From IMG/VR virus record IMGVR_UViG_3300044633_000899, positions 232,331-296,330 of that record: 64,000 nt of DNA; one strand, given 5' to 3'. The position numbers and the translations under genes are program-made. This document shows positions 540 to 52,445 of the stretch, in pieces; the first letter of the stretch is position 1, and every line of letters starts with the position of its first letter. Below the pieces are notes generated by a model. That model was not told where the DNA came from. It made no database searches and saw nothing but the letters and a program-made list of their open reading frames with translations.

Positions 540-1847
540 ATGAGTAGACAACAATTTACGGCAAGAAATAATATTGGTAGTGTGTTAACATTTCAAAAGA
601 GTGGTGCGACCGCGTCTTTTGATCCTTTTGTTTCATTTAGTAGTGGTTCACGACGTGTTTCTTGGAAATTAGATAATGGTACAAATGTTACTCAAACCGC
701 AGGTAATGGTATTACTTATACTGGATTTACTTCAGATACTGGAATTAGGACAATACAAATGAAAGGTAATAGTTTTAGGGATATAAACTTTTTTAGATTA
801 GATAATGATAATTTATATGGTCATTTAGATCTAACCCAATTATCAGAGTTGAGTAATGTTTTTAGGGTGGATGGTAATATAAATTTAACCGGTATTACAC
901 ACGCGCCGTCATCACAAAATTTCTTACAATACCAAGCTAATAATTGTAAACTGACAGGAAATTTAGATTTAACACCATTATCTGGGTTAGGTGGTAGCTT
1001 TCAGGTTTCTAGTAATATAAATTTAACCGGTATTACACACGCGCCGTCATCACAAAATTTCTCACAATACATTGCTAATAATTGTAACCTAACCGGAAAT
1101 TTAGATTTAACACCATTGTCTGGGTTAGGTGGTGGGTTTTGGTTATATACAAACCCAAAATTAACTGGAATAACACACACACAATCATCACAAATTTTTA
1201 GTAATTATTACGCACAGTTTTGTAATCTAATAGGAATTTTAGATTTAACACCATTGTCTGGATTAGGTGGTGATATTAGAATTAATTCTAATACTGGTTT
1301 AACCAATGTAAACTTTACTATAAGTACACAAAACATAACAGCGTTAGCCTTGGACGGGTGTGACATAACGGGAGAAATAGATTTATCACCATTAACAAAA
1401 TTAGGCGCATCAAGCAGTGGTGTCACATTTAGTTGGGTGAGTTTACATACAAACCCAAACTTAACTAGTGTTATTTTCCCAAATACCAATCAGTTTTTTA
1501 AAAATGGTGTAGGGGGTGCCGAAGTGGTTAGCGTTTTTAGGTTATATGGTTGTAACTTAGATTACGTTGACTTTACCCCACTATCAGGTGCAACATTAGT
1601 GTCTGGTACAACACAAGGAAGACCAAGAATATCATTACGAGATAACAATATGTTAGCAGCAGATGTTAACCATATATTAGTTGATTTCAGTGGAAACACA
1701 ACATATAACCCAACAGGGTGGTCAAATGTAAATTTAAATATTGGAGGAACAAACGATCCCCCAGACTCATTTTCGGGTGGATATGATGGTTTAGCTGCAA
1801 TAAGTTTTTTAACGGGTTCACCGTATAATTGGATAATAACAACGTAA
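540..1847 (+). CDS. Leucine-rich-repeat-like beta-solenoid protein with 46-aa repeats, probable virion/receptor-binding accessory protein
   Basis: Repeated LxGxLDLTPLSGLGGxFxxxxNxNLTGITH units; lies directly after a fibre-like gene. Confidence 0.55.
   Translation: MSRQQFTARNNIGSVLTFQKSGATASFDPFVSFSSGSRRVSWKLDNGTNVTQTAGNGITYTGFTSDTGIRTIQMKGNSFRDINFFRLDNDNLYGHLDLTQLSELSNVFRVDGNINLTGITHAPSSQNFLQYQANNCKLTGNLDLTPLSGLGGSFQVSSNINLTGITHAPSSQNFSQYIANNCNLTGNLDLTPLSGLGGGFWLYTNPKLTGITHTQSSQIFSNYYAQFCNLIGILDLTPLSGLGGDIRINSNTGLTNVNFTISTQNITALALDGCDITGEIDLSPLTKLGASSSGVTFSWVSLHTNPNLTSVIFPNTNQFFKNGVGGAEVVSVFRLYGCNLDYVDFTPLSGATLVSGTTQGRPRISLRDNNMLAADVNHILVDFSGNTTYNPTGWSNVNLNIGGTNDPPDSFSGGYDGLAAISFLTGSPYNWIITT
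813..1395 (+). repeat. 138-bp (46-codon) intragenic tandem repeat, about 4-5 units
   Basis: taatataaatttaaccggtattacacacgcgccgtcatcacaaaatttct occurs at 875 and 1013 (period 138); atttagatttaacaccatt recurs at the same period. Confidence 0.85.
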
Positions 1848-4886: not shown

Positions 4887-5260
4887 TTAAATTTAACACC
4901 ATCACTTGCGATAACATACCAATTACCTTCAAGAAACTGGAACTGAACACAGGCACCCTTCTCTAAAAGAAGTTCGTCCCATTCTTCATCTATAGAACCA
5001 ACATCAGTTTTAATTAAAACATTTGTTAGTGATTTAATTGTTATTTTATTTGTTTTTCCCGATTTTAAAGTAACTTCAGAATATTCAACGTCTTTAACAA
5101 TTAAAAATGACTCATCGTTAATTATGTAATTATCAACAGAAATTATTTTTTGTATTTCCGTTGGTTTTTCAACAACTACTTTTGGTTCAACAACCGTTTG
5201 TGTGTGATATCTAACAACATTTTTTCGTTGTGTGATATTTTCTACTCTTAATCCACCCAT
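4883..5260 (-). CDS. Hypothetical protein, probably structural (beta-rich)
   Basis: 125-aa ORF co-oriented and abutting the neck gene; its stop overlaps the polymerase stop. Confidence 0.7.
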   Translation of the reverse strand: MGGLRVENITQRKNVVRYHTQTVVEPKVVVEKPTEIQKIISVDNYIINDESFLIVKDVEYSEVTLKSGKTNKITIKSLTNVLIKTDVGSIDEEWDELLLEKGACVQFQFLEGNWYVIASDGVKFN

Positions 5261-6387
5261 TATATTACGTATATTTGTCTTGGCATCGCCCTAAATTTTA
5301 GGGATTTATTTAAATTTTCAGCAAGTAATGCTTCTCTTTCAATTACTTTGTCTGGTTTCAATCTTGTTAATCTTCCTTCAGCACCAATTAACTCATCAAT
5401 TAATTTTGTTTTTTCATCTTTCGCTTCAGTTGCAAGTGATGTGTAATCCATTGTTAAGTCACCGTCTGGTGTTTTTAAGTTACCACTGAATTTTCCACGT
5501 ACTCTAGAAAGTGTTTCTTTACAGTAAGCAATAAACCATCGTCTAACCCAAATTTGAGAGGGGTTATTTAAGTCCACCCAACTCATTTTATCAAATGGTA
5601 CATCAGAAGGTAATTTAATAATGTCTGGGTTGTCTTTTAAACATTTGTCTCTATCGGCAGGACCAACATCATAATACCAATACCAGACCTTTCCTTTTGT
5701 TAGTGTTCCATTACCAAAGTCAAATTTACCACCAGGTGTGTTCATTAAGTGTATCGCTTTTTTACCATCGGGTAACGCTGTTACTCTATATGTTAAATCA
5801 CCTGCGATAATTCTTCTTTGTATGTTTATTTCTTGCATTCTTAATAACATATCAAACGCCGGCATCATAAAATAACTTCCGGCCATATTACCCATTTGTG
5901 CAAGACCTCCGCCACCACCAAGACCACCTCCGGCACCTAACGCACCAAAAGACCAAGGGTCAAACATTGTATTATTTAATGTCGCTGGGGTAAACCATAG
6001 TAATTCGTTTAATTCACGATTGGCAGGTATTTCATATATTTGTTGGTTTGGTGCTAATTGAATGTAGTCTTTTTTTAAGACACTCTCACCGCCTGCTTGT
6101 AACCCAACAATTTTTGAGTAAGCATAAGTATATCTTGTTTCATAATCTAAACTTCTTGTCGTAAACGCTTTTGATAAAGATTGTGTGTCTAAGTTTAAAT
6201 TGTTTAATGCAGTCCATTGTGACTCAATTAACCAATCTTGTACATATTGTGAATATTCATCAATTGAGAACTCTAAAAGTGTATCCATTTGTTCGTCCTC
6301 TAACTCAACACTTCTCTGTGGAGCACCTAATAAATGTCTAACTTTTTTATATAAGTTACTTCTTTCTGGTTCGTCAATTATTCCCAT
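5260..6387 (-). CDS. Neck/head-completion protein (T4 gp13-like)
   Basis: N-terminal LLGAPQRSVELEDEQMD pattern and C-terminal coiled coil as in gp13-type neck proteins; TATTTAT motif upstream at 6401-6407. Confidence 0.65.
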   Translation of the reverse strand: MGIIDEPERSNLYKKVRHLLGAPQRSVELEDEQMDTLLEFSIDEYSQYVQDWLIESQWTALNNLNLDTQSLSKAFTTRSLDYETRYTYAYSKIVGLQAGGESVLKKDYIQLAPNQQIYEIPANRELNELLWFTPATLNNTMFDPWSFGALGAGGGLGGGGGLAQMGNMAGSYFMMPAFDMLLRMQEINIQRRIIAGDLTYRVTALPDGKKAIHLMNTPGGKFDFGNGTLTKGKVWYWYYDVGPADRDKCLKDNPDIIKLPSDVPFDKMSWVDLNNPSQIWVRRWFIAYCKETLSRVRGKFSGNLKTPDGDLTMDYTSLATEAKDEKTKLIDELIGAEGRLTRLKPDKVIEREALLAENLNKSLKFRAMPRQIYVI

Positions 6388-6423
6388 AGTGATTTTTTAT
6401 ATAAATATCAACAAGTTTAAATT

Positions 6424-6870
6424 TTAACCGATTACCATTAATTTTGGGTTGTAGTTTCTAACTGGGTTTGCGTCACTTATGTTAAACGTTTTGTCTAACC
6501 ACACTTTTATAATTGATTCTGTTTGTTCTGGTGTTAATTTAAAAAAATTTTCTAACACCATCCAAAATTCAGAATTGTTAATAAACATTTTTTTTGTCAA
6601 TAGATTAAAAACTATCAAATTGTCATTTGGTTTTTTGCGAAACAACATTAAATTAGATGATGTTTTACTTATAACCGTTTCTAAATCGTTATACAAATTT
6701 AAAAACTCAAACGGATTGTTGTCAAACCCTTTTGATATGATTGTGTCAATACTATTAAAATATATTAATTTATTCCACCCCTCATTTTTAATCTTATTTT
6801 GGATGATTTCTTTTTCACTTAAAGATTCATTTAATCTTTTGTACTGACTTTCGGATATAATAATTTTCAT
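6424..6870 (-). CDS. Variable-tail family protein, divergent member
   Basis: MKIIISESQYK leader; PFEFLNLYNDL matches the family motif PMDFLNLFNDL; WLD..FN motif followed by a tail of the same length ending IG. Confidence 0.85.
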   Translation of the reverse strand: MKIIISESQYKRLNESLSEKEIIQNKIKNEGWNKLIYFNSIDTIISKGFDNNPFEFLNLYNDLETVISKTSSNLMLFRKKPNDNLIVFNLLTKKMFINNSEFWMVLENFFKLTPEQTESIIKVWLDKTFNISDANPVRNYNPKLMVIG

Positions 6871-6874
6871 ATTG

Positions 6875-6881
6875 ATAAATA
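6875..6881 (-). promoter_or_regulatory. TATTTAT motif, putative late promoter (representative copy; about 22 copies upstream of genes)
   Basis: Coding-strand TATTTAT at 6401, 6875, 7346, 7832, 9391, 9875, 10346 (minus) and 12149, 13773, 15616, 21049, 23028, 35179, 38178, 41494, 46346, 47862, 48988, 51303, 51990, 52422, 61599 (plus), about 4-40 nt before start codons, mainly of structural genes. Confidence 0.7.
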
Positions 6882-6891
6882 TTCTATTTTT

Positions 6892-7341
6892 TCAATTTGT
6901 AGACCTCATCCAATTGTCATCAACACCAATTATCAATGGTATGACATCCCTTAAATTGTGGGTCAACCATTTCTGTATAAGTTTCTGTATATTAGTGTAG
7001 TTAAGACCAAAGTTACCTTCCAAAACTGACCAAATTTCATTATAATTAATATAAACCTCATCACTTTCTCTATCGTGAATGATAAAATTATGACCTTTTT
7101 TAAAACGATATAATGTCCAATATTCTTCTTCTTCACTCTGAACCGATTCCAGATCATTAAATAAGTTTAAGAAATCCATTGGTTCTTTAATGTCAAAAAT
7201 TTCAAGAGTTTTATCCAAGGACCCAACAATCTTTGTTACAGATTCAAAACCAACCTTTTTTATTAAACCCAATAATTTTTCTTTTAAAGAAACGTTTTCT
7301 TTAATTAGTTTGTATTGACTTTCGGTGATGATAATTTTCAT
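6892..7341 (-). CDS. Variable-tail family protein
   Basis: 149 aa, family core PMDFLNLFNDLESVQSEE; ends in the second repeat copy read as WMRSTN*. Confidence 0.9.
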   Translation of the reverse strand: MKIIITESQYKLIKENVSLKEKLLGLIKKVGFESVTKIVGSLDKTLEIFDIKEPMDFLNLFNDLESVQSEEEEYWTLYRFKKGHNFIIHDRESDEVYINYNEIWSVLEGNFGLNYTNIQKLIQKWLTHNLRDVIPLIIGVDDNWMRSTN

Positions 7342-7377
7342 ATTGATAAATATTCTAATTTTTTTAAATTGTAGATA

Positions 7378-7827
7378 TCATTCAATTTTTCCAATTACTT
7401 CCGTGCTGTTTGCGTAGATTCTGACTCCCCTTAAATTGTAGACCTCACCCAACCATATCTCTATAATTTTCTGTCTTTCAGAAAATTTAAGACCAAATTT
7501 ATCTTCCAATACTGACCAAATTTCATCAGAATTGATATAAACAGAATCATTTTTTCTATCGTAAACCATAAAGTTATGACCTTTTCTATAACGATACAAT
7601 GTCCAATTTTCATCTTCCTCACTCTGAACCGATTCCAAATCATTAAATAAATTTAAGAAATCCATCGGTTCTTTGACATCAAAGATTTCAAATGTTTTAT
7701 CCAAAGATCCAACAATCTTTGTTACAGATTTAAAACCAACTTTTTTTATTAAACCCAACAATTTTTCCTTTAAAGAAACGTTTTCTTTGATTAGTTTGTA
7801 TTGACTTTCGGATATAATAATTTTCAT
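7378..7827 (-). CDS. Variable-tail family protein
   Basis: 149 aa, family core; WLGEVYNLRGVR plus unique tail IYANSTEVIGKIE*. Confidence 0.9.
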   Translation of the reverse strand: MKIIISESQYKLIKENVSLKEKLLGLIKKVGFKSVTKIVGSLDKTFEIFDVKEPMDFLNLFNDLESVQSEEDENWTLYRYRKGHNFMVYDRKNDSVYINSDEIWSVLEDKFGLKFSERQKIIEIWLGEVYNLRGVRIYANSTEVIGKIE

Positions 7828-7862
7828 ATTGATAAATATTCTAATTTTTTAAATTGTAGACC

Positions 7863-9386
7863 TCATCCAGTAAAGAAATCCATTGGCATAAATACAAATT
7901 TAGGTGTGACTCCCCTTAAATTGTAGACCTCATCCAACCACCTCTCTGTAAGTTTTTGTATTTCAGAGTAGTTAAGACCAAATTTATCTTCCAAAACTGA
8001 CCAAATTTCATCATAATTGATATAAACATAATCCTTTTTTCTATCGTAAATCATTATATTATGATCTTTTTTATAACGAAATAATATCCAATTTTCTTTT
8101 TCTTCAGATTGGGTACCTTTCAAATCATTAAATAGATGTAAGAAATCCATCGGTTCTTTAATGTCAAAAATTTTAAATAAATTATCCAAGGATCCAACAA
8201 TTTTTGTTACAGATTCAAAACCAACTTTTTTGATTAAACCCAATAATTTTTCTTTTAAAGATATTGATTCATTTAATGGTTTTTTATTATCCTCTTTTTT
8301 TGTTTTTGAGATATATAAATCATTAACAAATTCCCAATTAACACAATTCCAAAAGTTTTTAATATATTCGTCACGTTTATTTTGATATTTTAAATAATAC
8401 GCGTGTTCCCAGACATCCAACCCCAACAATGGATAACCACCATCTTTAATGATATTCATTAATGGATTATCTTGATTTGGTGTGGACATAATTTTAAGTC
8501 TATTTGTTTTTGTTAAGACAAGCCAAACCCAACCAGAACCAAATCTATCTTTTGCAATTTGGTTAAACTCATCTTTCATCTTTTTTATATTACCATATTG
8601 TTTGGTAATTTTATCAAAAATTTCACCCTTTGGTATTTGTTTCTTTGGTGACAACATCTTCCAAAACAAAGCGTGGTTAAAAGCACCCCCAGCGTTGTTT
8701 CGTACTTTCTCATCAAATTTACTAATTGATTTTATAATATCTTCTAATTCAAGATCTTTATGTTTTTTTTCAGATAAAGCATCATTTAATTTTTTAACAT
8801 AACCTTTATAATGTTTGTTGTAATGAATATCCATCGTTTTTGGATCAACAAATTGTTTTAATGCGGAATATGAATATGGTAATTTTTCAATACCAATTTT
8901 TTTCATTTCCATAATAAACTCTTCTTTGATGTTTTCTTTTTCCGTTAAGAGAATTTGTTCTGAGATAAGATTAATTTTATTAACTATTTTTTCTGAACAC
9001 TCAAAAACCAATTGATTATAATCTGGGTATTCTTTTTCAAACATTTTTATTAATCTACCAGCAAAAGCGTTTGCCTCATCTTCATTTTGACCACCAATAT
9101 CTGGTCCTCGTTCTCTACCTAAAGAAAAACGTTGGTGTGCGTGAACCCACTCGTGAGCCAAGGTTCTCATAATGTCACGATTTAATCTATTTTTTGATAA
9201 AATTTTTAATGTACCGTCCATACTCTGACTACCAGTTGACATTTGACCCATTTTATCACCCAAAAACAAAATTGTTAAATCTTGATTAACAGGATAATGA
9301 TTACCTAAAAACTTGATAAAATCATTGTACATTTTTTTATCGTTAGCATCAAGTCCAGAATCATTATGTTTAATTGTGATTTTCAT
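7863..9386 (-). CDS. sodA: Tripartite fusion: HExxH zincin-like domain + Mn-type (Fe/Mn family) superoxide dismutase + variable-tail family domain
   Basis: TLAHEWVH...EDEANAFAG (aa ~75-110); SOD motifs LPYSYSAL, HYNKH, NNAGGAFNH, FGSGWVWL, NQDNP, DVWEHAYY (GG and NQD point to the Mn type); the last ~135 aa are a variable-tail domain. Confidence 0.9.
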   Translation of the reverse strand: MKITIKHNDSGLDANDKKMYNDFIKFLGNHYPVNQDLTILFLGDKMGQMSTGSQSMDGTLKILSKNRLNRDIMRTLAHEWVHAHQRFSLGRERGPDIGGQNEDEANAFAGRLIKMFEKEYPDYNQLVFECSEKIVNKINLISEQILLTEKENIKEEFIMEMKKIGIEKLPYSYSALKQFVDPKTMDIHYNKHYKGYVKKLNDALSEKKHKDLELEDIIKSISKFDEKVRNNAGGAFNHALFWKMLSPKKQIPKGEIFDKITKQYGNIKKMKDEFNQIAKDRFGSGWVWLVLTKTNRLKIMSTPNQDNPLMNIIKDGGYPLLGLDVWEHAYYLKYQNKRDEYIKNFWNCVNWEFVNDLYISKTKKEDNKKPLNESISLKEKLLGLIKKVGFESVTKIVGSLDNLFKIFDIKEPMDFLHLFNDLKGTQSEEKENWILFRYKKDHNIMIYDRKKDYVYINYDEIWSVLEDKFGLNYSEIQKLTERWLDEVYNLRGVTPKFVFMPMDFFTG

Positions 9387-9423
9387 AATTATAAATATCT
9401 AATGATTGTAAAATATAGTTTTA

Positions 9424-9870
9424 TTAAATCATAGATATCATCCAATCCCAATTCTGAAAGTTCTCAAAAACCCAAGTCGGTCTGGTTCTCTTTAAATTGT
9501 AGGTATCATCCAACCAATCCTTAATAAGGTTACTTATATCATAATAGTTTGTTAAATGTTTCTGTTCTAAAACTGACCAAATGTCACCATAATTGATATA
9601 AACAGCATCACTTCTTCTGTCGTGAATCATAATGTTATAACCTTTTTTATAACGATATAATGTCCAAGATGGTCTTTCCTCACTCTGAATTACATCCAAT
9701 TCATTAAATAAATTTAAGAAATCCATCGGTTCTTTGATATCCAAAATTTCAAGTGTTTTATCCAAGGATCCAACAATTTTTGTTGTGGACTTAAAACCAA
9801 TTTTTTTAACTAAACCTAGTAATTTTTCTTTAATCGATTTATATTGATTTTCGGTTATAATAATTTTCAT
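9424..9870 (-). CDS. Variable-tail family protein
   Basis: 148 aa, family core; WLDDTYNLKRTR plus unique tail ending WMISMI*. Confidence 0.9.
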   Translation of the reverse strand: MKIIITENQYKSIKEKLLGLVKKIGFKSTTKIVGSLDKTLEILDIKEPMDFLNLFNELDVIQSEERPSWTLYRYKKGYNIMIHDRRSDAVYINYGDIWSVLEQKHLTNYYDISNLIKDWLDDTYNLKRTRPTWVFENFQNWDWMISMI

Positions 9871-9891
9871 ATTGATAAATATTTCACTTTT

Positions 9892-10341
9892 TTAAATTGT
9901 GGTGTTGTGTATACCAACAATATGGTTATACGTTGTGATTCCCTTTAAATCATAGACCTCATCCAACCACGTTTCTACAAGGGTTGTAATGTCACCAAAG
10001 TTAATATCAAAATTATCTTCCAAAATTGTCCATATTTCGTCATAATTAATGAAAACATATTTAATTTTTCTATCGTAAATCATAAAATTATGACCTTTTT
10101 TATATCTATACAATACCCAATTTGGTTCTTCTTCACTCTGAACAACATCCAAATCATTAAATAAGTTCAAGAAATCCATTGGTTCTTTAATATCAAAGAT
10201 ATCAAAAGTTTTATCCAAAGACCCAACAACTCTTATCGTTGATTCAAATCCAACCTTTTTGATTAAACTCAATAATTTTTCTTTTAAAGAAACGTTTTCT
10301 TTGATTAGTTTGTATTGACTTTCGGTTATTATTATTCGCAT
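9892..10341 (-). CDS. Variable-tail family protein
   Basis: 149 aa, family core; WLDEVYDLKGIT plus unique tail TYNHIVGIHNTTI*. Confidence 0.9.
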   Translation of the reverse strand: MRIIITESQYKLIKENVSLKEKLLSLIKKVGFESTIRVVGSLDKTFDIFDIKEPMDFLNLFNDLDVVQSEEEPNWVLYRYKKGHNFMIYDRKIKYVFINYDEIWTILEDNFDINFGDITTLVETWLDEVYDLKGITTYNHIVGIHNTTI

Positions 10342-10352: not shown

Positions 10353-12110
10353 TTACATTTTTTGATTAATTGATTTTAAAATTTCTTCAACGGTATCACC
10401 AGGGTCTGAACTAACATCACCCATAACAGTACCAATTATTTTTTTCTTATTGTTTAATATGTCATAAATAGCACCCTCAATTGTGTTGATAAACAAAGGA
10501 TAATAAACCAATACATTATTTTTTTGACCATATCTGTACGCCCTATCTTCGGCTTGTGCGTGTTCCGCTGGGACAAAAGATAAGTCATTCATTATTACCG
10601 CTTCAGCCTTTGTTAGTGTTAAACCAACCCCCGCCGCTTTTAGATTTCCAACAAATACTTTTATCTTGTCGTTTTCTTGAAACTGGTCAACAGCATATTG
10701 TCTTTGTGTTTTATTACAACTACCATCCAAATAGACAGATTGTTTACCGAAGTGATTATGAATCATTTGTAACGTTTCCGTAAAGTTTGTAAAAATAATA
10801 ACTTTCTTATCTTGATCAATTATATTTTGGGCAAATTCAATTGTTTCTTTAACCTTTTCATTAGCAATCAATTTTCTAATTTGCATAAGTTTTGAAAATT
10901 GTACCGTTAACGACGACGACCCTTCTTCTTTATCCAACCACACATAATATTCACCCATAAGGTCTTTATACTCTTTTGATGTTGTTTTTAAATAAATTGG
11001 TGTTATTATCTTATCTGGTAAATCTAAAACCTCATCTTTTAACCTACGAAGAATTTGACCCGAAGTTCTTTCCCTTAGTTCTTCCAAGTTTGATGCACCA
11101 TTAACATTCCAAACCTTTCTATTGCCAGCCCTAAATTGATAACCTTCACAATAACGAATAGCATATGCCATCCAGTTTTGTGCAACAGGACTTTCAATCA
11201 AGTTTAATAAATTATAATAATTGATTGGTCTGTTTGTCATTGGTGTTCCCGTTAATAACCACAAATATTTGGCCTTTTTTGTAAAACTATTAATTATTTT
11301 TGTTCTGGCCGCCTGACTATTACTTACCATATGTGCCTCATCCAATATGATCAAATCAAAATTAATTTGACCTATAACCGAATCGTGGGGGTTTTTAATG
11401 TCATAAAAATTTTTTAAGATGTCATAATTAACAATTACAATGTCGTGTTCCGTTGAGAATTTTTTACCTTCCGCAATAAAAACAGATTTATCTGAATATA
11501 TTGCAATCTCTCGTTGCCAATTTATTTTAAGAGACGCGGGACAAACAACTAAAATCTTTTTCGCTTTGGTCTCAAGTGCTGCAATAATTGTGGAGCATGA
11601 CTTGCCAACGCCCATGTCATCCGCCAAAATAAACCTTTTTGACCCCACCAATTTCTCAATCGCTTCTTTTTGATGTGGTAATGGGGGTCTGTTGTCATAC
11701 TTTGAGTAATCAACCTCAACCTTTTCAATTGTATGTGATTTTATTAATGATGATTTTGGAATCCAAAATTCGGATAATTGATCCTTCTCAAAGAACTTAC
11801 CCCAAATATGGTAGGACTTATCTTTTTCAACTAATAATTTCTCAATGTAAATTTGTTTTGGTGTTTCAAGAAAATACCTTTCTTTAGCGAATTTTTCAGC
11901 AAAATACGTATCAAGGTCAACCCACTTTCTAGCGACTTTTGGGTTCGTACTATAATAATTTACAATATATTCCGCTTGAGTTCTAGTTGGGTAAAACTTT
12001 TTATTTGTTTGTTTTTTGACTTTCATATATAATATATGATTGTTCGCACCATCATATGTGTCCAATAATTCTAAAGCCTTATGTTCTATTAGTTGTTTTT
12101 GATTTTCCAA
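10353..12110 (-). CDS. SNF2-family (SWI2/SNF2) helicase/ATPase
   Basis: ILADDMGVGKS, LIILDEAH, LTGTP, QAEDRAYRYGQ motifs. Confidence 0.92.
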   Translation of the reverse strand: MENQKQLIEHKALELLDTYDGANNHILYMKVKKQTNKKFYPTRTQAEYIVNYYSTNPKVARKWVDLDTYFAEKFAKERYFLETPKQIYIEKLLVEKDKSYHIWGKFFEKDQLSEFWIPKSSLIKSHTIEKVEVDYSKYDNRPPLPHQKEAIEKLVGSKRFILADDMGVGKSCSTIIAALETKAKKILVVCPASLKINWQREIAIYSDKSVFIAEGKKFSTEHDIVIVNYDILKNFYDIKNPHDSVIGQINFDLIILDEAHMVSNSQAARTKIINSFTKKAKYLWLLTGTPMTNRPINYYNLLNLIESPVAQNWMAYAIRYCEGYQFRAGNRKVWNVNGASNLEELRERTSGQILRRLKDEVLDLPDKIITPIYLKTTSKEYKDLMGEYYVWLDKEEGSSSLTVQFSKLMQIRKLIANEKVKETIEFAQNIIDQDKKVIIFTNFTETLQMIHNHFGKQSVYLDGSCNKTQRQYAVDQFQENDKIKVFVGNLKAAGVGLTLTKAEAVIMNDLSFVPAEHAQAEDRAYRYGQKNNVLVYYPLFINTIEGAIYDILNNKKKIIGTVMGDVSSDPGDTVEEILKSINQKM

Positions 12111-13794: not shown

Positions 13795-14211
13795 ATGAAA
13801 AAAATTTTAAGACTAACAGAAAACGATTTAACCCGTATCGTTAAACGAGTTATTCGTGAACAAGATGGTGAATCACATAATAAAATATCAGATGAAGATT
13901 TTGATTCTTTTTTAGATGTTTTATCACAATATGAATCAGGTGACATTACTTGGGATGACTTTTTAGAAAAAAGTGAAGCTATTGGTTCAAAATATGTGGT
14001 TGGACCAAAACCAAAATCAAACGTTTTTATTGGGTTGTCTAATCAAGTTGAAGAGTTTAATCAAAAGTTGTCAAACCATTATGATGACCTAATTAGAAAT
14101 TCTACGTTATTTGGTAATATTTATGATGCTTACGAATCTGGTGAATTAACTAACGATGAAGGGTTCACTCTATTGAAAATGATCCGTACGGTAGAATATA
14201 ACGACCGTTAA
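13795..14211 (+). CDS. Acidic protein with LTExDLxRIVxRVIxE leader, putative internal head protein
   Basis: MKKILRLTENDLTRIVKRVIREQ N-terminus shared with 47881 and 52024; own TATTTAT motif at 13773. Confidence 0.75.
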   Translation: MKKILRLTENDLTRIVKRVIREQDGESHNKISDEDFDSFLDVLSQYESGDITWDDFLEKSEAIGSKYVVGPKPKSNVFIGLSNQVEEFNQKLSNHYDDLIRNSTLFGNIYDAYESGELTNDEGFTLLKMIRTVEYNDR

Positions 14212-23049: not shown

Positions 23050-26000
23050 ATGGCCGAAAGCGTTTTATCATTTGTTAATTCATCAAGTTTTAGAAATCAA
23101 CTAATTTCTAGAAACTTAAAACCATATTCGGTTTCAGGTACGTTTTCCGGGCCAACAACAAACATTAATTACGAAACAAATTTAACTGTTAGTAGTGTTA
23201 TTGATTCCCCAGACACATTAATATCAACAAATACTTTTGCAAATACATTATATCCGTTAAATGAGTTTGGACCTGAAGGTGGGTTCAATGGCAAATATTC
23301 GTTACCAGGAGCACCATATCCTGTAGATTCAAATTCTGGGCCATACAATCCAAACGACACAAATCTTGATTTAATAAATGAATTTTTTATTGATGCGGCA
23401 TATATTCAAAACATATATGGGCCAGAAGGTGGATATAGTGATTTAGTTGTGATAACAGACGTTGTAGGAGGTCCAAAACTATATAAACCATACTGGGATC
23501 CGTCAGCATTTGTTACCTCAACATATAGTACGTATGATTTAGTCTTTAATAATAATCCGACAGGTTCAAACGGACCATTGTCACAAGATACATATTTAGC
23601 GAAGATTGGTGCACAACAATTAAAAAGTGCGTTTGACGAGAGAATTGCCGAACAAGTTAGAAAAAACACAATCGGTCGTATAAATTTGGATTCATTACAA
23701 GATCCATTTAGTGCGTCATTAGTTGCTACTGGTAAAGAACCGTTTATTGAAAAAAATTGGACAATTACACAACCAGAAAACCCAATTGCCGCAGCCGCGT
23801 CTTTCGCGTTAAGAATGTCTGGAACATATTTTCCTGTTTCAACAATTCCTGGTGATTATTTTAATGATACTAATATTCAATCACCATTACTTGAAAAAGC
23901 ACTAAACGTTGGTAACGCTTTAACTGGTGGTTTGTTAGGGCCAATCTTAGATGTTTATAGAAATCCATCTGAAACATTTGTTGCAAACACTGGTAATGGT
24001 CAACGGTCAATTCTATTTTCAACATTAGATTATAATAAATACAGACCAAAATATTCAAGGGGAATACTACAAAGTATAACAACTGGTATTGATCGTTTAT
24101 TAGATTCTGACAAACCAAATACTGGTGGGTATTACGTTGGAAGTCCGAACGCGGAACCATCACAAATAAGTTCCCCAGCAAACCAAATTCCAATTGGTCC
24201 TAACGGAAGACAAATAAACACAATTGTTTATGGTCCACAAGAGTTGGGTATACTATATGAAGGTAATGAAAACAGAATAGTAAACGGCCTAAAAGGTAAA
24301 TCACTTAATGATGGTGGTGGTATTTCAGGACAATTTGTTTGGACATCACCCAAATACAAAGATAATGCAGGATTTAAACAAGGTGTTGGTGGTAAAACAA
24401 CAACATTAGATGTTGGTTTTGAATCAATTAGTGCCGACTACGAACGATACCAATCAACCGAAATTCCATTTAAAGAGGGGTCAATATTAGACCAAACTCA
24501 AAGATTGATAGATTCGGCGGATAAAGTTACAGGCCAATCAAGATTAAAACACGTCGGAAATGCGATTAATCAAGTATCAAAAGTGTTTAATGATGGTTAT
24601 AAAGAATTAACAAAAGGTTCTCAAGTTTTATCATATAAAAATGATTCAGATGGTACTGAAGAAGGGCTTGAATATTGTCGTGTATTCACTAAAGACACAC
24701 CATATTACACATATGGTGATTTACAAAAAACAGATGGTATTACAGAAGAAGGTCGTAAGTTTTCTCACTCTGTGTTTGATAAAACATACAATTTAAATAT
24801 TGCACCATTAAAAATACCAGGATCAACAAATATTGTTGATAATAAAGTAAAAAAATATATGTTCTCAATTGAGAATTTGGCTTGGAGAACATCCGACAGA
24901 CCAGGGTATACGTATGATGACTTACCTGTTTGTGAAAGAGGTGCGAATGGTGGTCGTGTAATGTGGTTTCCACCATATGATTTAACTTTTTCAGACGAAA
25001 GTTCACCAACATTTAACCAAACATCGTTTTTGGGTAGACCAGAACCGATATATACATACAAAAACACAACAAGAAAGGGTTCCATTAGTTGGAAAATAAT
25101 TGTGGATCATCCAGCAGTTATGAATACAATCGTTCAAAAACAATTAAAAAATGTTGACCCAATAAAATTAAACTCAATGATGGACTCGTTTTTTGCGGGT
25201 TGTTTAAAATATGATTTATATGAGTTGGGGATTAAATTTAACACAATACCAACTAAAGATTTATTTACTTACCAACAAATATTAAATAACCCTAGATTAA
25301 CATCCGAAGAATTGGGTCAAGTGGCGTTAGAATTACCAAAAGACCAACAATCTGGCGGTGGAACTAAAGGTGACGCAAACGCAGTTGTTGATAATACACC
25401 TCAAGTTGCCGAAACAAAAGAAGACACCTCAAATGAATTACAATCTGTTGACTTAACTAAATTTGTTGGTTATGGATTTTATTTTGACAACGATTGTCCG
25501 GAATGTAAAAATAGTACATCAATTACTGCTAGTCAACCATATGATTCGTGGTATTCTCAATATGTTGGTAGAGAATCGGTATATCAATCTACAGCACCAA
25601 TAAAGGTTTATATTGACAACGGAACAACAGAATTTTCTAAAGATGGTATTGGTGAATTTTTTACACAAGTTGTAAAAGGAAATTATGATGTTATTAATAA
25701 TGATTTAATAAAACAACTTGGTGATATTTTATCAAAAGGTGGTAATGTTACAATTGATTTACAAGGATCCGCTTCAGCGGTTGCTTCAACAGGATATAAT
25801 GAAAAATTATCAAAACGAAGAATTGACTCGGTAAAAAAATGGTTAAAAACAAAACAAGATGTGAATGGTGTTTCTTTTAACGATTATATCACTAATAATA
25901 AAATAAAAATTACTGAAGATCCCAGAGGTGAAGAAATTTCAATACCAAAAACAAGCACAAAGGACAGTGAAACACAAACAGTTGTTAACACAGACAATAC

Positions 26001-28143
26001 ACAAGGTATATTATCAACAAATGTAAATTGTAACTCAAACGTACAAGAAAAAGTAGGAAATACGTTTAAAACAACAGTAAACGCTGAGATTTACTCAATA
26101 CCCGCGATGGCATGTAGACGTGTTGTTATTAAAAATATTACAGCGCAACAACCACCAGAAAAAACACCAGATGTGGTTGGTGGTGGTAGTCAAACTACAA
26201 CAACAACAACAATAAATGTTGCGGAGGTTAAAACAAAAGTTAGTGATACTATTAAACCAACACCAAACACAACAATTGAACAAAAGATAAAAGATGGTAT
26301 ATCTAAAAAAGTATTACGCCATTTATTTTCAGAATGTGATTATTTTGAGGTTATTAAAGAAAGTGACCCAATGGTTTATCAATCAATTAAGGATAAAATA
26401 AAACATTTTAATCCAGCGTTTCACTCAATGACACCAGAAGGTTTAAATTCACGTTTAACGTTTTTAAATCAATGTGTTAGACCAGGACAAACAATTCCAA
26501 TCATTGGTGCTGACGGTAGACCAAAATATAATGACGCATTAAACACATCATTTGGTGCACCACCAATTTTAGTTTTAAGGGTTGGTGACTTTTACCATAG
26601 TAAGATAGTACCAAATAGTTTATCGTTTTCTTATGATGATGCGAAATACGATTTAAATCCTGAAGGTATTGGTGTACAACCAATGATTGTTAAAGTATCA
26701 ATGAGTTTTGATTTTATTGGTGGTCACGGTTTAAAAGAACCTGTTGAAGAATTACAAAATGCACTATCATTTAATTTTTATGCAAATACTGAGATTTATG
26801 ACGAGAGAGCAACAGCAACAGAAGATGTTAGTGAGAGAGATAAATATGTTGTTGAAAAAATATTATCAAATCAACCACCAGTAAAAATAAATCAAGTACA
26901 AAACCAAATACCAAAAAGGGGTGGTAGTACAATTGGGAATATAGTTAGCGCTACTGAAATAGATTATACAAGTAGTTTAAACAATTTCTGGAAAAAAACT
27001 GTTGAGTACATTGATTCGGTTATTGATACAACAAACACGTTGGTTAAAACAACCAATATTGGTATTGTGTATTCATTATTTAACGATAGAGATTATACAA
27101 CAGGAACTTATGATGAGTACGGAACAGGTGGAACAATAACAATTTACGGAAAACCAAAAACTATTGAAGAAAAATTAGACAAACTTTACGAACGAGTTTT
27201 AGATGATATATCTAGTGACAACGATAGTAATAGTTTTATGAACCAAATTCAATTAAATTCAAATAACATAACAAAAAAAGACATACGTGAAATTGGTGAT
27301 AGACTTAAAACTTATGTTTCAACAATGAAAGATAGTTTTATTACGAATGTTAGTAACAATGTTAGTAAATTGGTTCTATTACAACAAGATTATGTACAGT
27401 ATGTTAGACAATATAATTTATTGTTAACAAAAACTGATGGGTCTATGAATTCAAATAATATACCGAATATATATAATTTATCTGGTGATAATTTAAATTT
27501 AATAACAAACGTTTATACAACAATAAAAAACAAACATATAGAATTTTTTGATAACCCTAACGGTATTATTAAAGGTGTTAGCAAAACAACTGGTGTGCAA
27601 TTTTATGGATTAACACTAGAACCAACCGTAAATGAAATTAACATCTATGATAATAAAACTTCAACATTTAAAGATGAGGGTTTTCGTGGGGATAGTGGTC
27701 TTGGTGAAATACAAGACGCAAAAGTCGCTTTTGCTTGGGAAACAGCATCTAACCCAGCCGACAATAGATTTTATCAAGTTATGGCACAAGTGTTTAATAA
27801 TACAACATTAACCAACGAATTAACAACACAATTACTAAACAGTAATGTATATAGTGATAAATCAAAGGTTGAGACCGCAATTAACCAAGCGATTACATAT
27901 TGGACAGATAGGAATTTTTATACTGAATATTGTAATAAAAGATTTTCAGATGAAATAAAAAAGGCACAAGAATATACAACATTAATTGAATCACCAATTG
28001 ACGATAGTGTAAAATATGTTGTAGATTACACATTTACAACTGAGGGAACACAAGATCAAAAAACAAGAATTAATAACATTTATTCAACAAATAACATTAA
28101 CACGAAAACAAATACGTTTGATGGTAAAATAAAATTTAATTAA
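23050..28143 (+). CDS. Large baseplate protein with two tube-initiator-like domains and an OmpA-like insertion
   Basis: MWFPPYDLTFSDES...GRPEPIYTYKNTTRKGSISWKIIVDH and PPILVLRVGDFY...PMIVKVSMSFDFIGG; OmpA-like YNEKLSKRRIDSV...RGEE...CRRV between them. Confidence 0.6.
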   Translation: MAESVLSFVNSSSFRNQLISRNLKPYSVSGTFSGPTTNINYETNLTVSSVIDSPDTLISTNTFANTLYPLNEFGPEGGFNGKYSLPGAPYPVDSNSGPYNPNDTNLDLINEFFIDAAYIQNIYGPEGGYSDLVVITDVVGGPKLYKPYWDPSAFVTSTYSTYDLVFNNNPTGSNGPLSQDTYLAKIGAQQLKSAFDERIAEQVRKNTIGRINLDSLQDPFSASLVATGKEPFIEKNWTITQPENPIAAAASFALRMSGTYFPVSTIPGDYFNDTNIQSPLLEKALNVGNALTGGLLGPILDVYRNPSETFVANTGNGQRSILFSTLDYNKYRPKYSRGILQSITTGIDRLLDSDKPNTGGYYVGSPNAEPSQISSPANQIPIGPNGRQINTIVYGPQELGILYEGNENRIVNGLKGKSLNDGGGISGQFVWTSPKYKDNAGFKQGVGGKTTTLDVGFESISADYERYQSTEIPFKEGSILDQTQRLIDSADKVTGQSRLKHVGNAINQVSKVFNDGYKELTKGSQVLSYKNDSDGTEEGLEYCRVFTKDTPYYTYGDLQKTDGITEEGRKFSHSVFDKTYNLNIAPLKIPGSTNIVDNKVKKYMFSIENLAWRTSDRPGYTYDDLPVCERGANGGRVMWFPPYDLTFSDESSPTFNQTSFLGRPEPIYTYKNTTRKGSISWKIIVDHPAVMNTIVQKQLKNVDPIKLNSMMDSFFAGCLKYDLYELGIKFNTIPTKDLFTYQQILNNPRLTSEELGQVALELPKDQQSGGGTKGDANAVVDNTPQVAETKEDTSNELQSVDLTKFVGYGFYFDNDCPECKNSTSITASQPYDSWYSQYVGRESVYQSTAPIKVYIDNGTTEFSKDGIGEFFTQVVKGNYDVINNDLIKQLGDILSKGGNVTIDLQGSASAVASTGYNEKLSKRRIDSVKKWLKTKQDVNGVSFNDYITNNKIKITEDPRGEEISIPKTSTKDSETQTVVNTDNTQGILSTNVNCNSNVQEKVGNTFKTTVNAEIYSIPAMACRRVVIKNITAQQPPEKTPDVVGGGSQTTTTTTINVAEVKTKVSDTIKPTPNTTIEQKIKDGISKKVLRHLFSECDYFEVIKESDPMVYQSIKDKIKHFNPAFHSMTPEGLNSRLTFLNQCVRPGQTIPIIGADGRPKYNDALNTSFGAPPILVLRVGDFYHSKIVPNSLSFSYDDAKYDLNPEGIGVQPMIVKVSMSFDFIGGHGLKEPVEELQNALSFNFYANTEIYDERATATEDVSERDKYVVEKILSNQPPVKINQVQNQIPKRGGSTIGNIVSATEIDYTSSLNNFWKKTVEYIDSVIDTTNTLVKTTNIGIVYSLFNDRDYTTGTYDEYGTGGTITIYGKPKTIEEKLDKLYERVLDDISSDNDSNSFMNQIQLNSNNITKKDIREIGDRLKTYVSTMKDSFITNVSNNVSKLVLLQQDYVQYVRQYNLLLTKTDGSMNSNNIPNIYNLSGDNLNLITNVYTTIKNKHIEFFDNPNGIIKGVSKTTGVQFYGLTLEPTVNEINIYDNKTSTFKDEGFRGDSGLGEIQDAKVAFAWETASNPADNRFYQVMAQVFNNTTLTNELTTQLLNSNVYSDKSKVETAINQAITYWTDRNFYTEYCNKRFSDEIKKAQEYTTLIESPIDDSVKYVVDYTFTTEGTQDQKTRINNIYSTNNINTKTNTFDGKIKFN

Positions 28144-28145: not shown

Positions 28146-28469
28146 ATGAATTTACAATATTTTAACCGATATAATCAATTTTTATCAAATGGTGTACAAC
28201 AAGTTGTTCCGTACATTAACCTACCATCAAAAGCGACGGATAAAACGTTTATATACCGTGCCGGACTATCTAGACTAGATAAGATCTCATTTCAATTTTA
28301 TGGAACACCATTCTTTGGGTGGTTAATCCAACAAGCAAACCCCCAATATTCTGGGTCTGAATGGAGCATACCAGACGGTGCTATCTTGACAATTCCATTT
28401 CCTTTACTAACTTCATTACAAGATTACAATAACGAATTAAACAACCACTTCTTCTATTATGGTAGATAA
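28146..28469 (+). CDS. LysM-like baseplate wedge protein (gp53/tail X-like)
   Basis: RLDKISFQFYGTPFFGWLIQQANP...IPDGAILTIPF. Confidence 0.75.
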   Translation: MNLQYFNRYNQFLSNGVQQVVPYINLPSKATDKTFIYRAGLSRLDKISFQFYGTPFFGWLIQQANPQYSGSEWSIPDGAILTIPFPLLTSLQDYNNELNNHFFYYGR

Positions 28470-51313: not shown

Positions 51314-51832
51314 ATGAAAATAATTATAACCGAAAATCAATACAAGTTAATTAAAGAAAACATTTCTTTAAAAGAAAAATTAAAGGACTTAATCAAAAAG
51401 GTTGGTTTTGAATCAATGGTAAGAGTTGTTGGATCCTTGGATAAAACGTTTGAAATCTTTGATGTCAAAGAACCGATGGATTTCTTAAATTTATTTAATG
51501 ATTTGGAATCGGTTCAGAGTGAAGAACGTGAAGATTGGACGTTATATCGTTATAAAAAAGGACATAATTTTATAGTTTACAATAGAAAAAATGATTATGT
51601 TCATATCAATTATGATGAAATTTGGTCAGTTTTAGAAGACAATTTTGGACTTAACTACTCTGAAACACAGAAACTTACAAAGAGATGGTTGGATGAGGTC
51701 TACAATTTAAGGGGAGTCACACCTTATATTTTTGACTTAACATCAACAGGGTTAAGGTTGGATGAGGTCTACAATTTAAGGGGAGTCACACCTCGCGAAA
51801 ATATATCGTTCGATATGTCTCGGATTGGATGA
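51314..51832 (+). CDS. Variable-tail family protein with duplicated tail unit
   Basis: 172 aa; family core; ...WLDEVYNLRGVT-PYIFDLTSTGLR-LDEVYNLRGVT-PRENISFDMSR-IG*. Confidence 0.9.
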   Translation: MKIIITENQYKLIKENISLKEKLKDLIKKVGFESMVRVVGSLDKTFEIFDVKEPMDFLNLFNDLESVQSEEREDWTLYRYKKGHNFIVYNRKNDYVHINYDEIWSVLEDNFGLNYSETQKLTKRWLDEVYNLRGVTPYIFDLTSTGLRLDEVYNLRGVTPRENISFDMSRIG

Positions 51833-51856
51833 GGTCTACAATTTAAGGGGAGTCAC
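51687..51856 (+). repeat. CRISPR-like repeat-spacer mini-array inside and beyond a CDS (3 x 34 bp; 35- and 33-nt unrelated spacers)
   Basis: GGTTGGATGAGGTCTACAATTTAAGGGGAGTCAC at 51687-51720 and 51756-51789 (identical) and 51823-51856 (1 mismatch); no cas genes in the window. Confidence 0.92.
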
Positions 51857-52023
51857 CGTCTATTGTAATATTTCCACAAAAAAGACATTTTTGTGAAACA
51901 ACACCAATCTTTTACTTTTTCACAAACAAGATTATTCTTTGAAAATAGGAAATAAACTTAAAAAGTGTAAATTTTTCATAACATCAATATATTTATATTG
52001 TAAATAATAAATAAAAAAAAACG

Positions 52024-52368: not shown

Positions 52369-52445
52369 ATTTCTTTTACTTTTTCACAAACAAGATTATT
52401 CTTTGAAAATAGGAAATAAACTATTTATCAAAAAAGAAGGAATTA

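What the first reader, a model, noticed from the sequence alone, without database searches (positions are those of the whole stretch)
7863..9386. Zincin protease-SOD-variable-tail polyprotein
Seen: an HEWVH...EDEANAFA domain (the HExxH plus ExxANxFA pattern of ImmA/IrrE-type metallopeptidases), a complete Mn-type SOD, then a variable-tail domain. The linkers contain LISE|Q, NIKE and PLNE|S, matching the [IL]-x-E ends of the leaders elsewhere. The 3' part of its tail domain is near-identical to the inverted copy at 51.6-51.7 kb up to the repeat end (GTCACACCT) and unrelated after it. Inference: a virion-packaged polyprotein cut by the prohead protease, delivering SOD into the capsid or host (oxidative/photo-protection), and a gene that recently captured a family member.
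Basis: partly seen in the sequence, partly recalled or inferred. Interest (0 to 1): 0.7.

Follow-up and report, generated by a model that had tools for sequence, protein, structure and literature searches.

The report
Phage zincin-SOD fusion ending in CRISPR-like array
A freshwater jumbo phage carries an intact gene that fuses a small zinc-protease-like domain, a complete manganese superoxide dismutase and one copy of a multicopy phage domain, and the gene's "variable tail" is the read-through of a small CRISPR-like repeat-spacer array that begins inside its last 13 codons.

Summary
The ORF at 7863-9386 (-) is real, intact and supported in independent lake metagenomes. It encodes 507 aa in three parts. 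The first is a zincin-fold domain with conserved HExxH and a Glu 20 residues downstream. The second is a complete Mn-type SOD. The third is one copy of a ~20-member paralog family of this 296-kb T4-like phage, whose host is probably a Flavobacterium.

The zincin-SOD core is widespread in related phages, always between an SNF2 helicase gene and the gp13 neck gene. Its C-terminal module is swapped repeatedly at a conserved KKxLNE(S) joint.

The main new result concerns the tail. The family domain's last 36 nt is the first direct repeat of a CRISPR-like mini-array. Spacers are 28-33 nt, the terminal repeat is degenerate, and turnover occurs at the gene-proximal spacer. This genome holds about eight to ten such arrays, and relatives have up to 6 repeats per array. 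No cas gene was found in the phage. The "variable tail" is translated spacer.

A T4-type protease is present, a late-promoter-like motif precedes the gene, and conserved L/I-x-E sites cluster in both linkers. It is unproven, and the protein lacks the N-terminal leader seen on about 30 other ORFs.

The parts
7863..9386 (-). Whole ORF (P0001, 507 aa): zincin domain, Mn-SOD, family domain, translated spacer
   Evidence: both junctions tiled by contigs of independent runs
9387..9402 (-). Late-promoter-like motif GATATTTATAATT directly upstream of the ATG (TATTTAT at -11)
   Evidence: The same motif lies upstream of the protease, neck, terminase-like, portal, sheath and capsid genes, but not the DNA polymerase, RNR or UvsX-like genes.
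9003..9386 (-). N-terminal zincin-fold domain, residues 1-128. HEWVH is at 9141-9155 and EDEANAFA at 9060-9083.
   Evidence: AF2 pLDDT is about 90. VIA-align Z is 9.8 to YbeY, 9.3 to an M30 peptidase, 9.0 to ERAP1 and 8.6 to Wss1. H78, E79, H82, E102 and N106 are kept in 70-71 of 71 homologs. A standalone 129-aa form exists in other phages.
8892..9002 (-). Linker 1, residues 129-165. It is a low-confidence long helix with four L/I-x-E sites (E143, E149, E155, E160), followed by M161-K-K, which looks like a relic SOD start.
   Evidence: pLDDT is 47-55. Sites 141-143 are kept in 69 of 71 homologs and 158-160 in 71 of 71.
8319..8891 (-). Fe/Mn superoxide dismutase, Mn-type, residues 166-356. Metal ligands are H188, H238, D324 and H328.
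   Evidence: Pfam, fold Z 21, PDB Mn-SODs at E 2e-62
8262..8318 (-). Linker 2, residues 357-375, with KKPLNE|S (E373 at 8268-8270). This is the conserved joint where C-terminal modules are exchanged.
   Evidence: [LIV]xE[SNTG] is present in 99 of 99 extended homologs, 14-19 residues after NWEFV. pLDDT is below 50 for 364-375.
7902..8261 (-). Family domain, residues 376-495, of unknown fold and function. It is one of about 20 paralogs in the genome.
   Evidence: AF2 pLDDT 80-95; no fold match
7903..7938 (-). Direct repeat 1 of the mini-array, 36 nt: GTTGGATGAGGTCTACAATTTAAGGGGAGTCACACC. It also codes for (W)LDEVYNLRGVT(P).
7872..7902 (-). Single 31-nt spacer, translated as the variable tail (P)KFVFMPMDFF
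   Evidence: In IMG/VR it was found only at the same array of three relatives.
7836..7871 (-). Degenerate terminal repeat. It holds the gene's stop codon (7863-7865) and runs into the next gene's promoter-like motif.
   Evidence: Terminal repeats average 6.3 mismatches against 0.5 for inner repeats.
6424..7827 (-). Three standalone family paralogs downstream (6424-6870, 6892-7341, 7378-7827). Repeat copies lie at 7418-7453, 7351-7386 and 6879-6914.
9424..10341 (-). Two standalone family paralogs upstream (9424-9870, 9892-10341). Repeat copies lie at 9479-9514, 9411-9446 and 9932-9967.
51314..51859 (+). Family paralog (172 aa) whose 3' end is an array of three repeats and two spacers. The repeats are at 51688-51723, 51757-51792 and 51824-51859.
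   Evidence: An identical array is present in IMG/VR locus L017.
5260..6387 (-). gp13-like neck protein gene. It is the conserved downstream neighbour of the SOD gene in relatives.
10353..12110 (-). SNF2-family helicase gene, the conserved upstream neighbour

Best explanation
SHOWN. The gene encodes one intact 507-aa protein built from three modules of separate origin: a minimal HExxH zincin, a complete Mn-type superoxide dismutase, and one copy of a multicopy phage domain. The zincin also exists as a free 129-aa gene in other phages.

The zincin-SOD core is an old, conserved gene of a clade of aquatic T4-like jumbo phages. It sits between the SNF2 helicase and gp13 neck genes. Downstream of a conserved KKxLNE(S) joint, the C-terminal module is exchanged often. 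Five states occur: none, three unrelated modules, or the family domain.

In this phage the partner is a family copy taken by recombination from the flanking tandem paralogs. That copy brings its own 3' end with it, and this end is a CRISPR-like mini-array. The last 36 nt of the domain are repeat 1, then come a 31-nt spacer and a degenerate terminal repeat that holds the stop codon. The variable tail is therefore translated spacer.

INFERRED.
- The gene is transcribed late, from the motif it shares with head, neck and terminase genes.
- The SOD removes superoxide late in infection.
- The mRNA's 3' end doubles as a pre-crRNA-like transcript. It would engage a host CRISPR system with 36-nt repeats, of the Flavobacterium II-C/VI-B kind, either as a decoy or to load phage-chosen guides. 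Host Cas1-Cas2 would renew the gene-proximal spacer.
- Cutting at the linker L/I-x-E sites by the T4-type prohead protease is possible. I put it at about 0.35.
For: Anatomy.

Real fusion.

Synteny.

Module swapping:
- The core tree needs 25 changes of module type.
- P0001+P0002 are nested among rows with other modules.
- Identical cores carry different modules.
- Relatives L095-L097 have the same tail copy and spacer as a free gene, and a different copy fused to the SOD.

Array:
- 23 repeat-like matches in the genome, including one 4-mismatch outlier, with 59-69 nt spacing.
- 49 arrays of 2-6 repeats in this genome plus IMG/VR loci.
- 69 spacers, 45 of them unique; 68 are 28-33 nt with mode 31, plus one 23-nt outlier.
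- Periods are not multiples of three.
- The tail endings WMRSTI* and ..G* are the same DNA repeat read in the other two frames.
- Terminal repeats are degenerate.
- In two independent cases, arrays with near-identical or identical upstream DNA (107-120 of 120 nt) share their distal spacers and differ in the proximal one.
- Another lineage has its own repeat variant in both copies.
- One spacer matches Flavobacteriaceae dihydrolipoyl dehydrogenase at 27 of 30 positions, with a chance expectation of about 0.001.
- The repeat is 21-23 of 36 identical to the 36-nt repeats of F. columnare and F. branchiophilum (PMC5395568, Table 4). Only 2-4 of 100,000 shuffles reach that.

The family ORF is coding: there is an excess of third-position changes and the AF2 pLDDT is 87.6.

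Late motif.
Against: - No cas gene was found in the phage. Cas1 and Cas2 are absent, and there was no Cas hit among about 26 large ORFs.
- No bacterial genome among 185,579 species holds the 22-nt repeat core, apart from a 1.8-kb contig in a Flavobacterium MAG. No repeat match was found in 401 Flavobacteriaceae genomes.
- The repeat has no stable hairpin and no Rfam match.
- Two spacers scanned against IMG/VR found no protospacer.
- No RNA run holds the locus, so transcription and processing have not been observed.
- SOD activity, metal specificity and zincin activity are inferred from sequence only.
Confidence: 0.62

Rival explanations
1. The product is a polyprotein incorporated into the prohead and cut by the T4-type prohead protease after L/I-x-E in both linkers. 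This would free the zincin, the SOD and the tail domain inside the capsid, for protection there or for delivery into the host.
For: - A Peptidase_S77 protease and a gp23-type capsid protein are present, and the capsid protein has FLINE|A where T4 gp23 is cut (the T4 alignment is from knowledge).
- gp21 cuts after L/I-X-E, and propeptides of giant phages carry redundant sites (PMC9026906).
- Four sites lie in the 20-residue linker 1, where 0.28 are expected. There are none in the 140-residue zincin and one in the SOD.
- The 158-160 site is kept in 71 of 71 homologs, and a linker 2 site in 99 of 99.
- Both linkers have low pLDDT.
- The gene carries the late-type motif and sits next to the neck gene.
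Against: - The N-terminus has no CTS-like leader. Residues 3-8 are a strand of the zincin fold. About 30 other ORFs of this genome carry conspicuous conserved leaders.
- The zincin occurs as a free gene among nucleotide-metabolism genes in other phages.
- K/E/L/I-rich helices give L/I-x-E by composition alone.
- M161-K-K can be a relic start codon.
- There are no virion protein data.
Confidence: 0.35
2. The repeat-spacer structure is not CRISPR-related. It would be a by-product of recombination or slippage at the 3' ends of a fast-duplicating gene family, or a protein-level C-terminal repeat.
For: There are no cas genes and no cognate host array, hairpin or Rfam match. Repeat 1 codes for a conserved part of the protein.
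Against: - 36-nt repeats that are perfect across loci and across phages lie next to unrelated spacers of tightly ruled length (28-33 nt).
- Periods of 65-69 nt break the reading frame, so the repeat is not at protein level.
- Terminal repeats are degenerate, and turnover is at the proximal spacer.
- One spacer derives from a host gene.
Confidence: 0.2
3. The zincin domain is the active protease of the system. It would process its own fusion, or the leader-bearing proteins, at the L/I-x-E sites.
For: The HExxH and Glu are conserved, and the fold resembles minimal self-processing zincins such as Wss1 and the minigluzincins.
Against: No specificity can be inferred. The free 129-aa form occurs in phages without the fusion. 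The genome already has the canonical protease for that motif.
Confidence: 0.08

Closest known systems
Orphan and mini CRISPR arrays on viruses (Sulfolobales virus mini-arrays, PMC6858448; arrays of huge phages; solitary repeat units or RNA anti-CRISPRs, PMC10651486)
   Same: They are short repeat-spacer arrays carried by a virus without an adaptation module, presumed to use or disturb host Cas proteins. Repeats are 36 nt and spacers about 30 nt, as in the Flavobacterium II-C and VI-B loci. The VI-B locus lacks cas1/cas2 and acquires spacers in trans, including from the host genome (PMC8092290).
   Different: Repeat 1 lies inside the coding 3' end of a conserved multicopy protein gene, so the gene acts as the leader and each new spacer rewrites the protein's C-terminus. 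There are about eight to ten arrays per genome. No matching host repeat has been found, and identity to known Flavobacterium repeats is only 21-23 of 36.
T4 internal proteins and capsid targeting sequences with gp21 processing
   Same: The phage has a T4-type protease and capsid protein, and L/I-x-E sites sit at module borders. Many small ORFs have a conserved N-terminal leader ending in I/L-x-E and otherwise unrelated bodies.
   Different: The fusion has no N-terminal leader, and its sites lie between internal modules. The leaders here are 15-22 residues, not 10. Nothing has been shown at the protein level.
Phage- and virus-encoded superoxide dismutases (Fe/Mn SODs of jumbo phages such as PA5oct relatives; virion Cu,Zn-SODs of giant viruses, from knowledge)
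   Same: A virus carries a complete SOD as an auxiliary enzyme.
   Different: Here the SOD is always fused behind a zincin domain and usually ahead of an exchangeable third module. No cultured phage in the collection shares the fusion.
Minimal zincins (YbeY, Wss1/SprT, minigluzincins, ImmA/IrrE M78)
   Same: An alpha/beta zincin fold of about 125 residues, with HExxH on the active-site helix and a downstream Glu in an ExxAN context.
   Different: No family model reaches its threshold. The structural scores do not single out M78: CapP gives Z 5.7 against 8.6-9.8 for the others.

Membership tests
Fe/Mn superoxide dismutase | Both Pfam domains (Sod_Fe_N, Sod_Fe_C) score above the curated cut-off | tested here: met
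   78.8 and 135.9 bits against cut-offs of 27 and 20.9
Fe/Mn superoxide dismutase | Four metal ligands (His, His, Asp, His) are present | tested here: met
   H188, H238, D324 and H328 are at least 90% conserved, and they align to a solved Mn-SOD
Fe/Mn superoxide dismutase | Mn rather than Fe specificity | tested here: inconclusive
   The best solved matches are Mn or cambialistic SODs (E 2e-62), against Fe-SODs at about 1e-45. The metal cannot be read from sequence with certainty.
Zincin / gluzincin metallopeptidase fold | HExxH plus a third ligand Glu about 20 residues downstream, on a zincin fold | tested here: met
   H78, E79, H82 and E102 are kept in 70-71 of 71 homologs. Z is 7-10 to many zincins over residues 1-120.
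ImmA/IrrE (Peptidase_M78, PF06114) | A match to the family model at its threshold | tested here: not met
   P0001 gives no hit. Twelve of 42 homologs give sub-threshold hits (best E 0.007), no better than SprT-like or DUF6055.
ImmA/IrrE (Peptidase_M78, PF06114) | HExxH ... ExxANxFA signature | tested here: met
   HEWVH and EDEANAFA are present and conserved. The Atlas lists an IrrE-like cluster at rank 8. The motif alone does not define the family.
Substrate of a T4-type prohead protease (packaged, processed protein) | A gp21-type protease is encoded, and L/I-x-E sites lie in exposed segments | tested here: met
   PF03420 scores 78.9 bits. Conserved sites lie in both low-pLDDT linkers.
Substrate of a T4-type prohead protease (packaged, processed protein) | An N-terminal capsid-targeting leader | tested here: not met
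   The N-terminus is part of the zincin fold. The leader motif of about 30 other ORFs is absent.
Substrate of a T4-type prohead protease (packaged, processed protein) | Presence in virions with E-cleaved termini | not testable with these tools
   The phage is uncultured and no proteome exists.
CRISPR array | Identical direct repeats of 23-55 nt separated by unique spacers of uniform length | tested here: met
   The repeat is 36 nt. Of 69 spacers, 45 are unique and 68 are 28-33 nt. Arrays hold 2-6 repeats.
CRISPR array | Polarised spacer turnover and a degenerate terminal repeat | tested here: met
   In two independent cases only the proximal spacer differs. Mismatches average 1.6 for first, 0.5 for inner and 6.3 for last repeats.
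CRISPR array | Spacers derived from foreign or host DNA | tested here: inconclusive
   One spacer matches the Flavobacteriaceae lpd gene at 27 of 30 positions. Two others have no protospacer in IMG/VR. Most were not tested.
CRISPR array | Cognate cas genes in the element or host, with a matching repeat | tested here: not met
   There is no Cas1 or Cas2 and no Cas among the large ORFs. The repeat is absent from bacterial genomes. Resemblance to Flavobacterium repeats is only 21-23 of 36.
CRISPR array | Transcription and processing into crRNAs | not testable with these tools
   All runs that hold the locus are DNA.

The most novel reading that the evidence does not exclude
A multicopy phage gene family is both a protein-coding gene and the leader plus first repeat of active CRISPR arrays. 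A cas-less T4-like jumbo phage would then keep about eight to ten self-renewing arrays that exploit its Flavobacterium host's adaptation and effector proteins. Each spacer acquisition would rewrite the C-terminus of the encoded protein, including that of the zincin-SOD fusion.
Probability: 0.45. Interest if true: 0.88.

Novelty: new variant of a known kind. Interest (0 to 1): 0.72.

Why it matters
There are three reasons.

First, the work defines a conserved zincin-MnSOD gene in an abundant clade of uncultured aquatic jumbo phages. The gene has a hot spot where third modules are exchanged.

Second, it corrects a tempting protein-level reading. The "variable tail" is DNA-level repeat-spacer structure, not a protein feature.

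Third, if the arrays are functional, they would be a case where a protein gene serves as the CRISPR leader and first repeat, repeated many times in a phage that has no cas genes. That bears directly on how phages hijack or jam host CRISPR systems, possibly the RNA-targeting VI-B systems of Flavobacteria. It is testable with small-RNA sequencing and lake time series.

The L/I-x-E linkers and the leader families also make this phage a good test of how far T4's targeting-and-cleavage logic reaches.

Tried and rejected
- Rfam on the array region found only chance matches.
- Folding the repeat as RNA gave no hairpin better than shuffles.
- An N-domain profile against PDB sequences found nothing at E < 0.1.
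- Fold searches of the family domain gave no informative match. PDB gave Z < 5. BFVD and AlphaFold DB clusters gave only uncharacterised proteins, with the best E at 2e-5. The Atlas gave only unnamed viral clusters.
- PHROGs and Pfam gave nothing for the C-terminal modules of relatives. The Atlas gave only unnamed viral clusters, including a free 342-aa form of the commonest module.
- Megablast of 20 kb of the window against cultured phages found no match.
- The repeat sequence was not found in the literature.
- The cas search covered Cas1 and Cas2 models on the genome, and Pfam or NCBIfam on about 26 large ORFs. Nothing was found, but the search was not exhaustive.
- Host repeat search: an exact 22-mer across 185,579 species, and BLAST of a six-repeat array against 401 Flavobacteriaceae genomes. 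No array was found.
- RNA runs: none holds the locus.
- Complex prediction and the search of protein representatives were not used, because no claim here depends on them.
Full report
CONTEXT. The window is the last 64 kb of a 296,330-bp IMG/VR virus record that CheckV rates complete. The phage is T4-like. It has a gp20 portal, a gp21-type prohead protease (Peptidase_S77), a gp23 capsid protein, a tail sheath, a baseplate wedge, a family-B DNA polymerase, a DnaB-like helicase, a UvsX-like recombinase and a ribonucleotide reductase. ORFs with SprB repeats and a type-9-secretion sorting domain point to Bacteroidota. The only bacterial record that shares the repeat described below is a small contig in a Flavobacterium MAG, which points to a Flavobacterium-like host. 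Runs that hold the locus are lake-water metagenomes. No cultured phage is close.

The ORF at 7863-9386 (-) is open for 507 codons.

- Residues 1-128 fold with high confidence into a zincin domain. Structural matches with Z 7-10 are all zincins: YbeY, an M30 peptidase, M1 aminopeptidases, Wss1, collagenases and minigluzincins. H78, E79, H82, E102 and N106 are kept in 70-71 of 71 homologs.
- Residues 166-356 are a full Fe/Mn SOD with all four ligands. Its best solved matches are Mn enzymes.
- Residues 376-495 belong to a family with about 20 members in this genome. Five of them flank the gene in tandem.
- The match to 51.5-51.7 kb is 205 nt at 88% and stops at 7902.
- Contigs from three independent lake runs cover both junctions without a difference.

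THE CORE GENE AND ITS CHANGING THIRD MODULE. A search of 5.8 billion proteins gave 2,732 relatives. All of the 120 examined share residues 1-365. After that point there are five states:

- nothing (about 360 aa);
- one of three unrelated modules of about 340 aa, one with a PD-(D/E)xK-like motif;
- one or two family domains.

The neighbours are constant: SNF2 helicase, this gene, gp13 neck protein, a small ORF, then the DNA polymerase on the other strand. In relatives no paralogs flank the gene. Every extended form has [LIV]-x-E-[SNTG] 14-19 residues after the SOD's NWEFV motif (99 of 99), while the short forms end before it.

On a maximum-likelihood tree of the core, the module types need 25 changes, where 5 is the minimum. 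Identical cores can carry different modules. P0001 with its 88% relative P0002 lies inside a clade that carries other modules, away from the main group of family-domain fusions. In three close relatives the same family copy, with the same tail, is a free gene just downstream of the SOD gene, and the SOD is fused to the copy that is free in our window. The mechanism is recombination among tandem paralogs.

The zincin alone also exists as a free 129-aa gene (50-60% identity) in other large phages, in a different neighbourhood and without an SOD.

THE VARIABLE TAIL IS A REPEAT-SPACER ARRAY. The 36 nt that code for (W)LDEVYNLRGVT(P) recur 67 nt downstream. The gene's TGA lies within that second, degenerate copy. 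The paralog at 51314-51832 has three copies with a period of 67-69 nt.

- Genome-wide there are 23 repeat-like matches, including one 4-mismatch outlier, spaced 59-69 nt, at the 3' ends of family genes.
- The recurrent tail endings WMRSTI* and ..G* are the same DNA read in the other two frames. The periods are not multiples of three. The conservation is therefore in the DNA.
- A scan of IMG/VR found 40 loci, with arrays of up to six perfect repeats.
- Over 49 arrays there are 69 spacers, 45 of them unique. Sixty-eight are 28-33 nt with mode 31, and one outlier is 23 nt.
- First, inner and last repeats differ from the consensus by 1.6, 0.5 and 6.3 positions on average.
- In two independent sets of arrays with near-identical or identical upstream DNA (107-120 of 120 nt), the distal spacers are shared and only the gene-proximal spacer differs.
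- A separate lineage of SOD-family fusions has its own repeat variant, and that variant is the same in both of its copies.
- One spacer matches the dihydrolipoyl dehydrogenase gene of several Flavobacteriaceae (27 of 30 positions; about 0.001 expected by chance).
- The repeat is 21-23 of 36 identical, in either orientation, to the 36-nt repeats of F. columnare CRISPR-2 and F. branchiophilum CRISPR-5 (PMC5395568). It is only 11-13 of 36 identical to other Flavobacterium repeat types. Just 2-4 of 100,000 shuffles reach 21.
- F. columnare has II-C and VI-B loci with 36-bp repeats, and the VI-B locus gains spacers in trans, including from the host genome (PMC8092290).

These points meet the structural definition of a CRISPR array.

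What is missing is a partner. There is no Cas1 or Cas2, no recognisable Cas in about 26 large ORFs, no host array with this repeat, no hairpin, no Rfam match and no RNA data.

The upstream ORF is nevertheless a real gene. It shows an excess of third-position changes among paralogs. It gives a confident AF2 model, and that fold has no informative match.

THE POLYPROTEIN IDEA. T4 gp21 cuts after L/I-X-E, and a 10-residue leader targets internal proteins to the prohead (PMC9026906).

Points in favour:

- This phage has the protease, and its capsid protein has FLINE|A at the expected place.
- P0001 has ten L/I-x-E sites. Four lie in the 20-residue linker 1, where 0.28 are expected at the proteome rate of 0.0139 per residue. 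None lies in the zincin and one in the SOD.
- The site at 158-160 is kept in 71 of 71 homologs. It precedes M161-K-K-I, which looks like the start of a once-separate SOD gene.
- The motif (G/T)ATATTTATA lies upstream of the protease, neck, terminase-like, portal, sheath and capsid genes, but not the DNA polymerase, RNR or UvsX-like genes. It lies 11 nt before the ATG of P0001 and of each flanking paralog. That suggests late expression.

Points against:

- The N-terminus is a strand of the zincin fold and lacks the conserved leaders, such as MKIIITESQYKLIKE and MKKIIRLTESDLTRIVKRVIKE. These head about 30 otherwise unrelated ORFs of this genome.
- Linker 1 is a K/E/L/I-rich helix, where such motifs arise by composition.
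- The free zincin gene of other phages sits among nucleotide-metabolism genes.

I rate processing at about 0.35.

VERDICT. The protein is a genuine late-type zincin-MnSOD enzyme with an exchangeable third module. Its variable tail is the translated spacer of a CRISPR-like mini-array that uses the family gene as its leader. This is a new variant of virus-borne orphan arrays. Its function, as a decoy for or a hijack of a host CRISPR system, remains to be shown.

Noticed in passing
whole genome; in the window e.g. 13795-14211, 46365-47051, 47058-47846, 47881-48375, 52024-52326: About 30 ORFs with unrelated bodies share conserved N-terminal leaders that end in I/L-x-E: MKKIIRLTESDLTRIVKRVIKE, MKIIITESQYKLIKEN and MKxFLITEEEKSRILGMH. 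DNA differences within the leaders are largely synonymous. They resemble long T4-style capsid targeting sequences and may mark a large set of packaged proteins.
   Followed up: partly
whole genome; window 9387-9402, 6388-6410 and upstream of each paralog: The motif (G/T)ATATTTATA is enriched about 10-fold upstream of genes. It sits 20-47 nt before the head, neck, terminase and sheath genes, but only 11-13 nt before 46 mostly small ORFs. This suggests a late promoter giving nearly leaderless mRNAs.
   Followed up: partly
window 51908-51958 and 52372-52422: Two perfect 51-nt direct repeats flank the 100-aa leader-bearing ORF at 52024-52326 (D9). They are unexplained and may mark a cassette boundary.
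   Followed up: no
window 802-1410 (ORF 540-1847): Five tandem 138-nt (46-codon) repeats lie inside a 435-aa ORF (D3/D4). The genome also encodes an 899-aa leucine-rich-repeat protein (L060).
   Followed up: no
L056 (genome 162873-165968): The T4-type portal gene carries an intein (Intein_splicing, E 2e-16) ahead of the Portal_T4 domain.
   Followed up: no
window 23050-28143, 28459-35160, 52446-57884: Three giant ORFs (1697, 2233 and 1812 aa) have no Pfam match at E < 0.001.
   Followed up: no
L062, L064 (genome 1739-4105, 149152-151404): The phage has an ORF with SprB repeats and a Por secretion C-terminal sorting domain, and a ClpB-like double AAA+ ATPase. The first supports a Bacteroidota host.
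   Followed up: no
L066 (genome 30782-31879) and L067 (genome 100424-101947): Two further fusions place a family domain at the C-terminus of other, unannotated N-terminal parts of 365 and 507 aa. The first is followed by a three-repeat array.
   Followed up: partly
relatives: unnamed locus; L098: In one relative the SNF2 helicase is 956 aa with a faint LAGLIDADG hit, possibly an intein or homing-endonuclease insertion. In another phage the thymidylate synthase gene is split by a NUMOD-type endonuclease gene.
   Followed up: no
window 51314-51832: In this paralog the second repeat is in frame, so the protein carries the peptide LDEVYNLRGVTP twice, 23 residues apart.
   Followed up: yes
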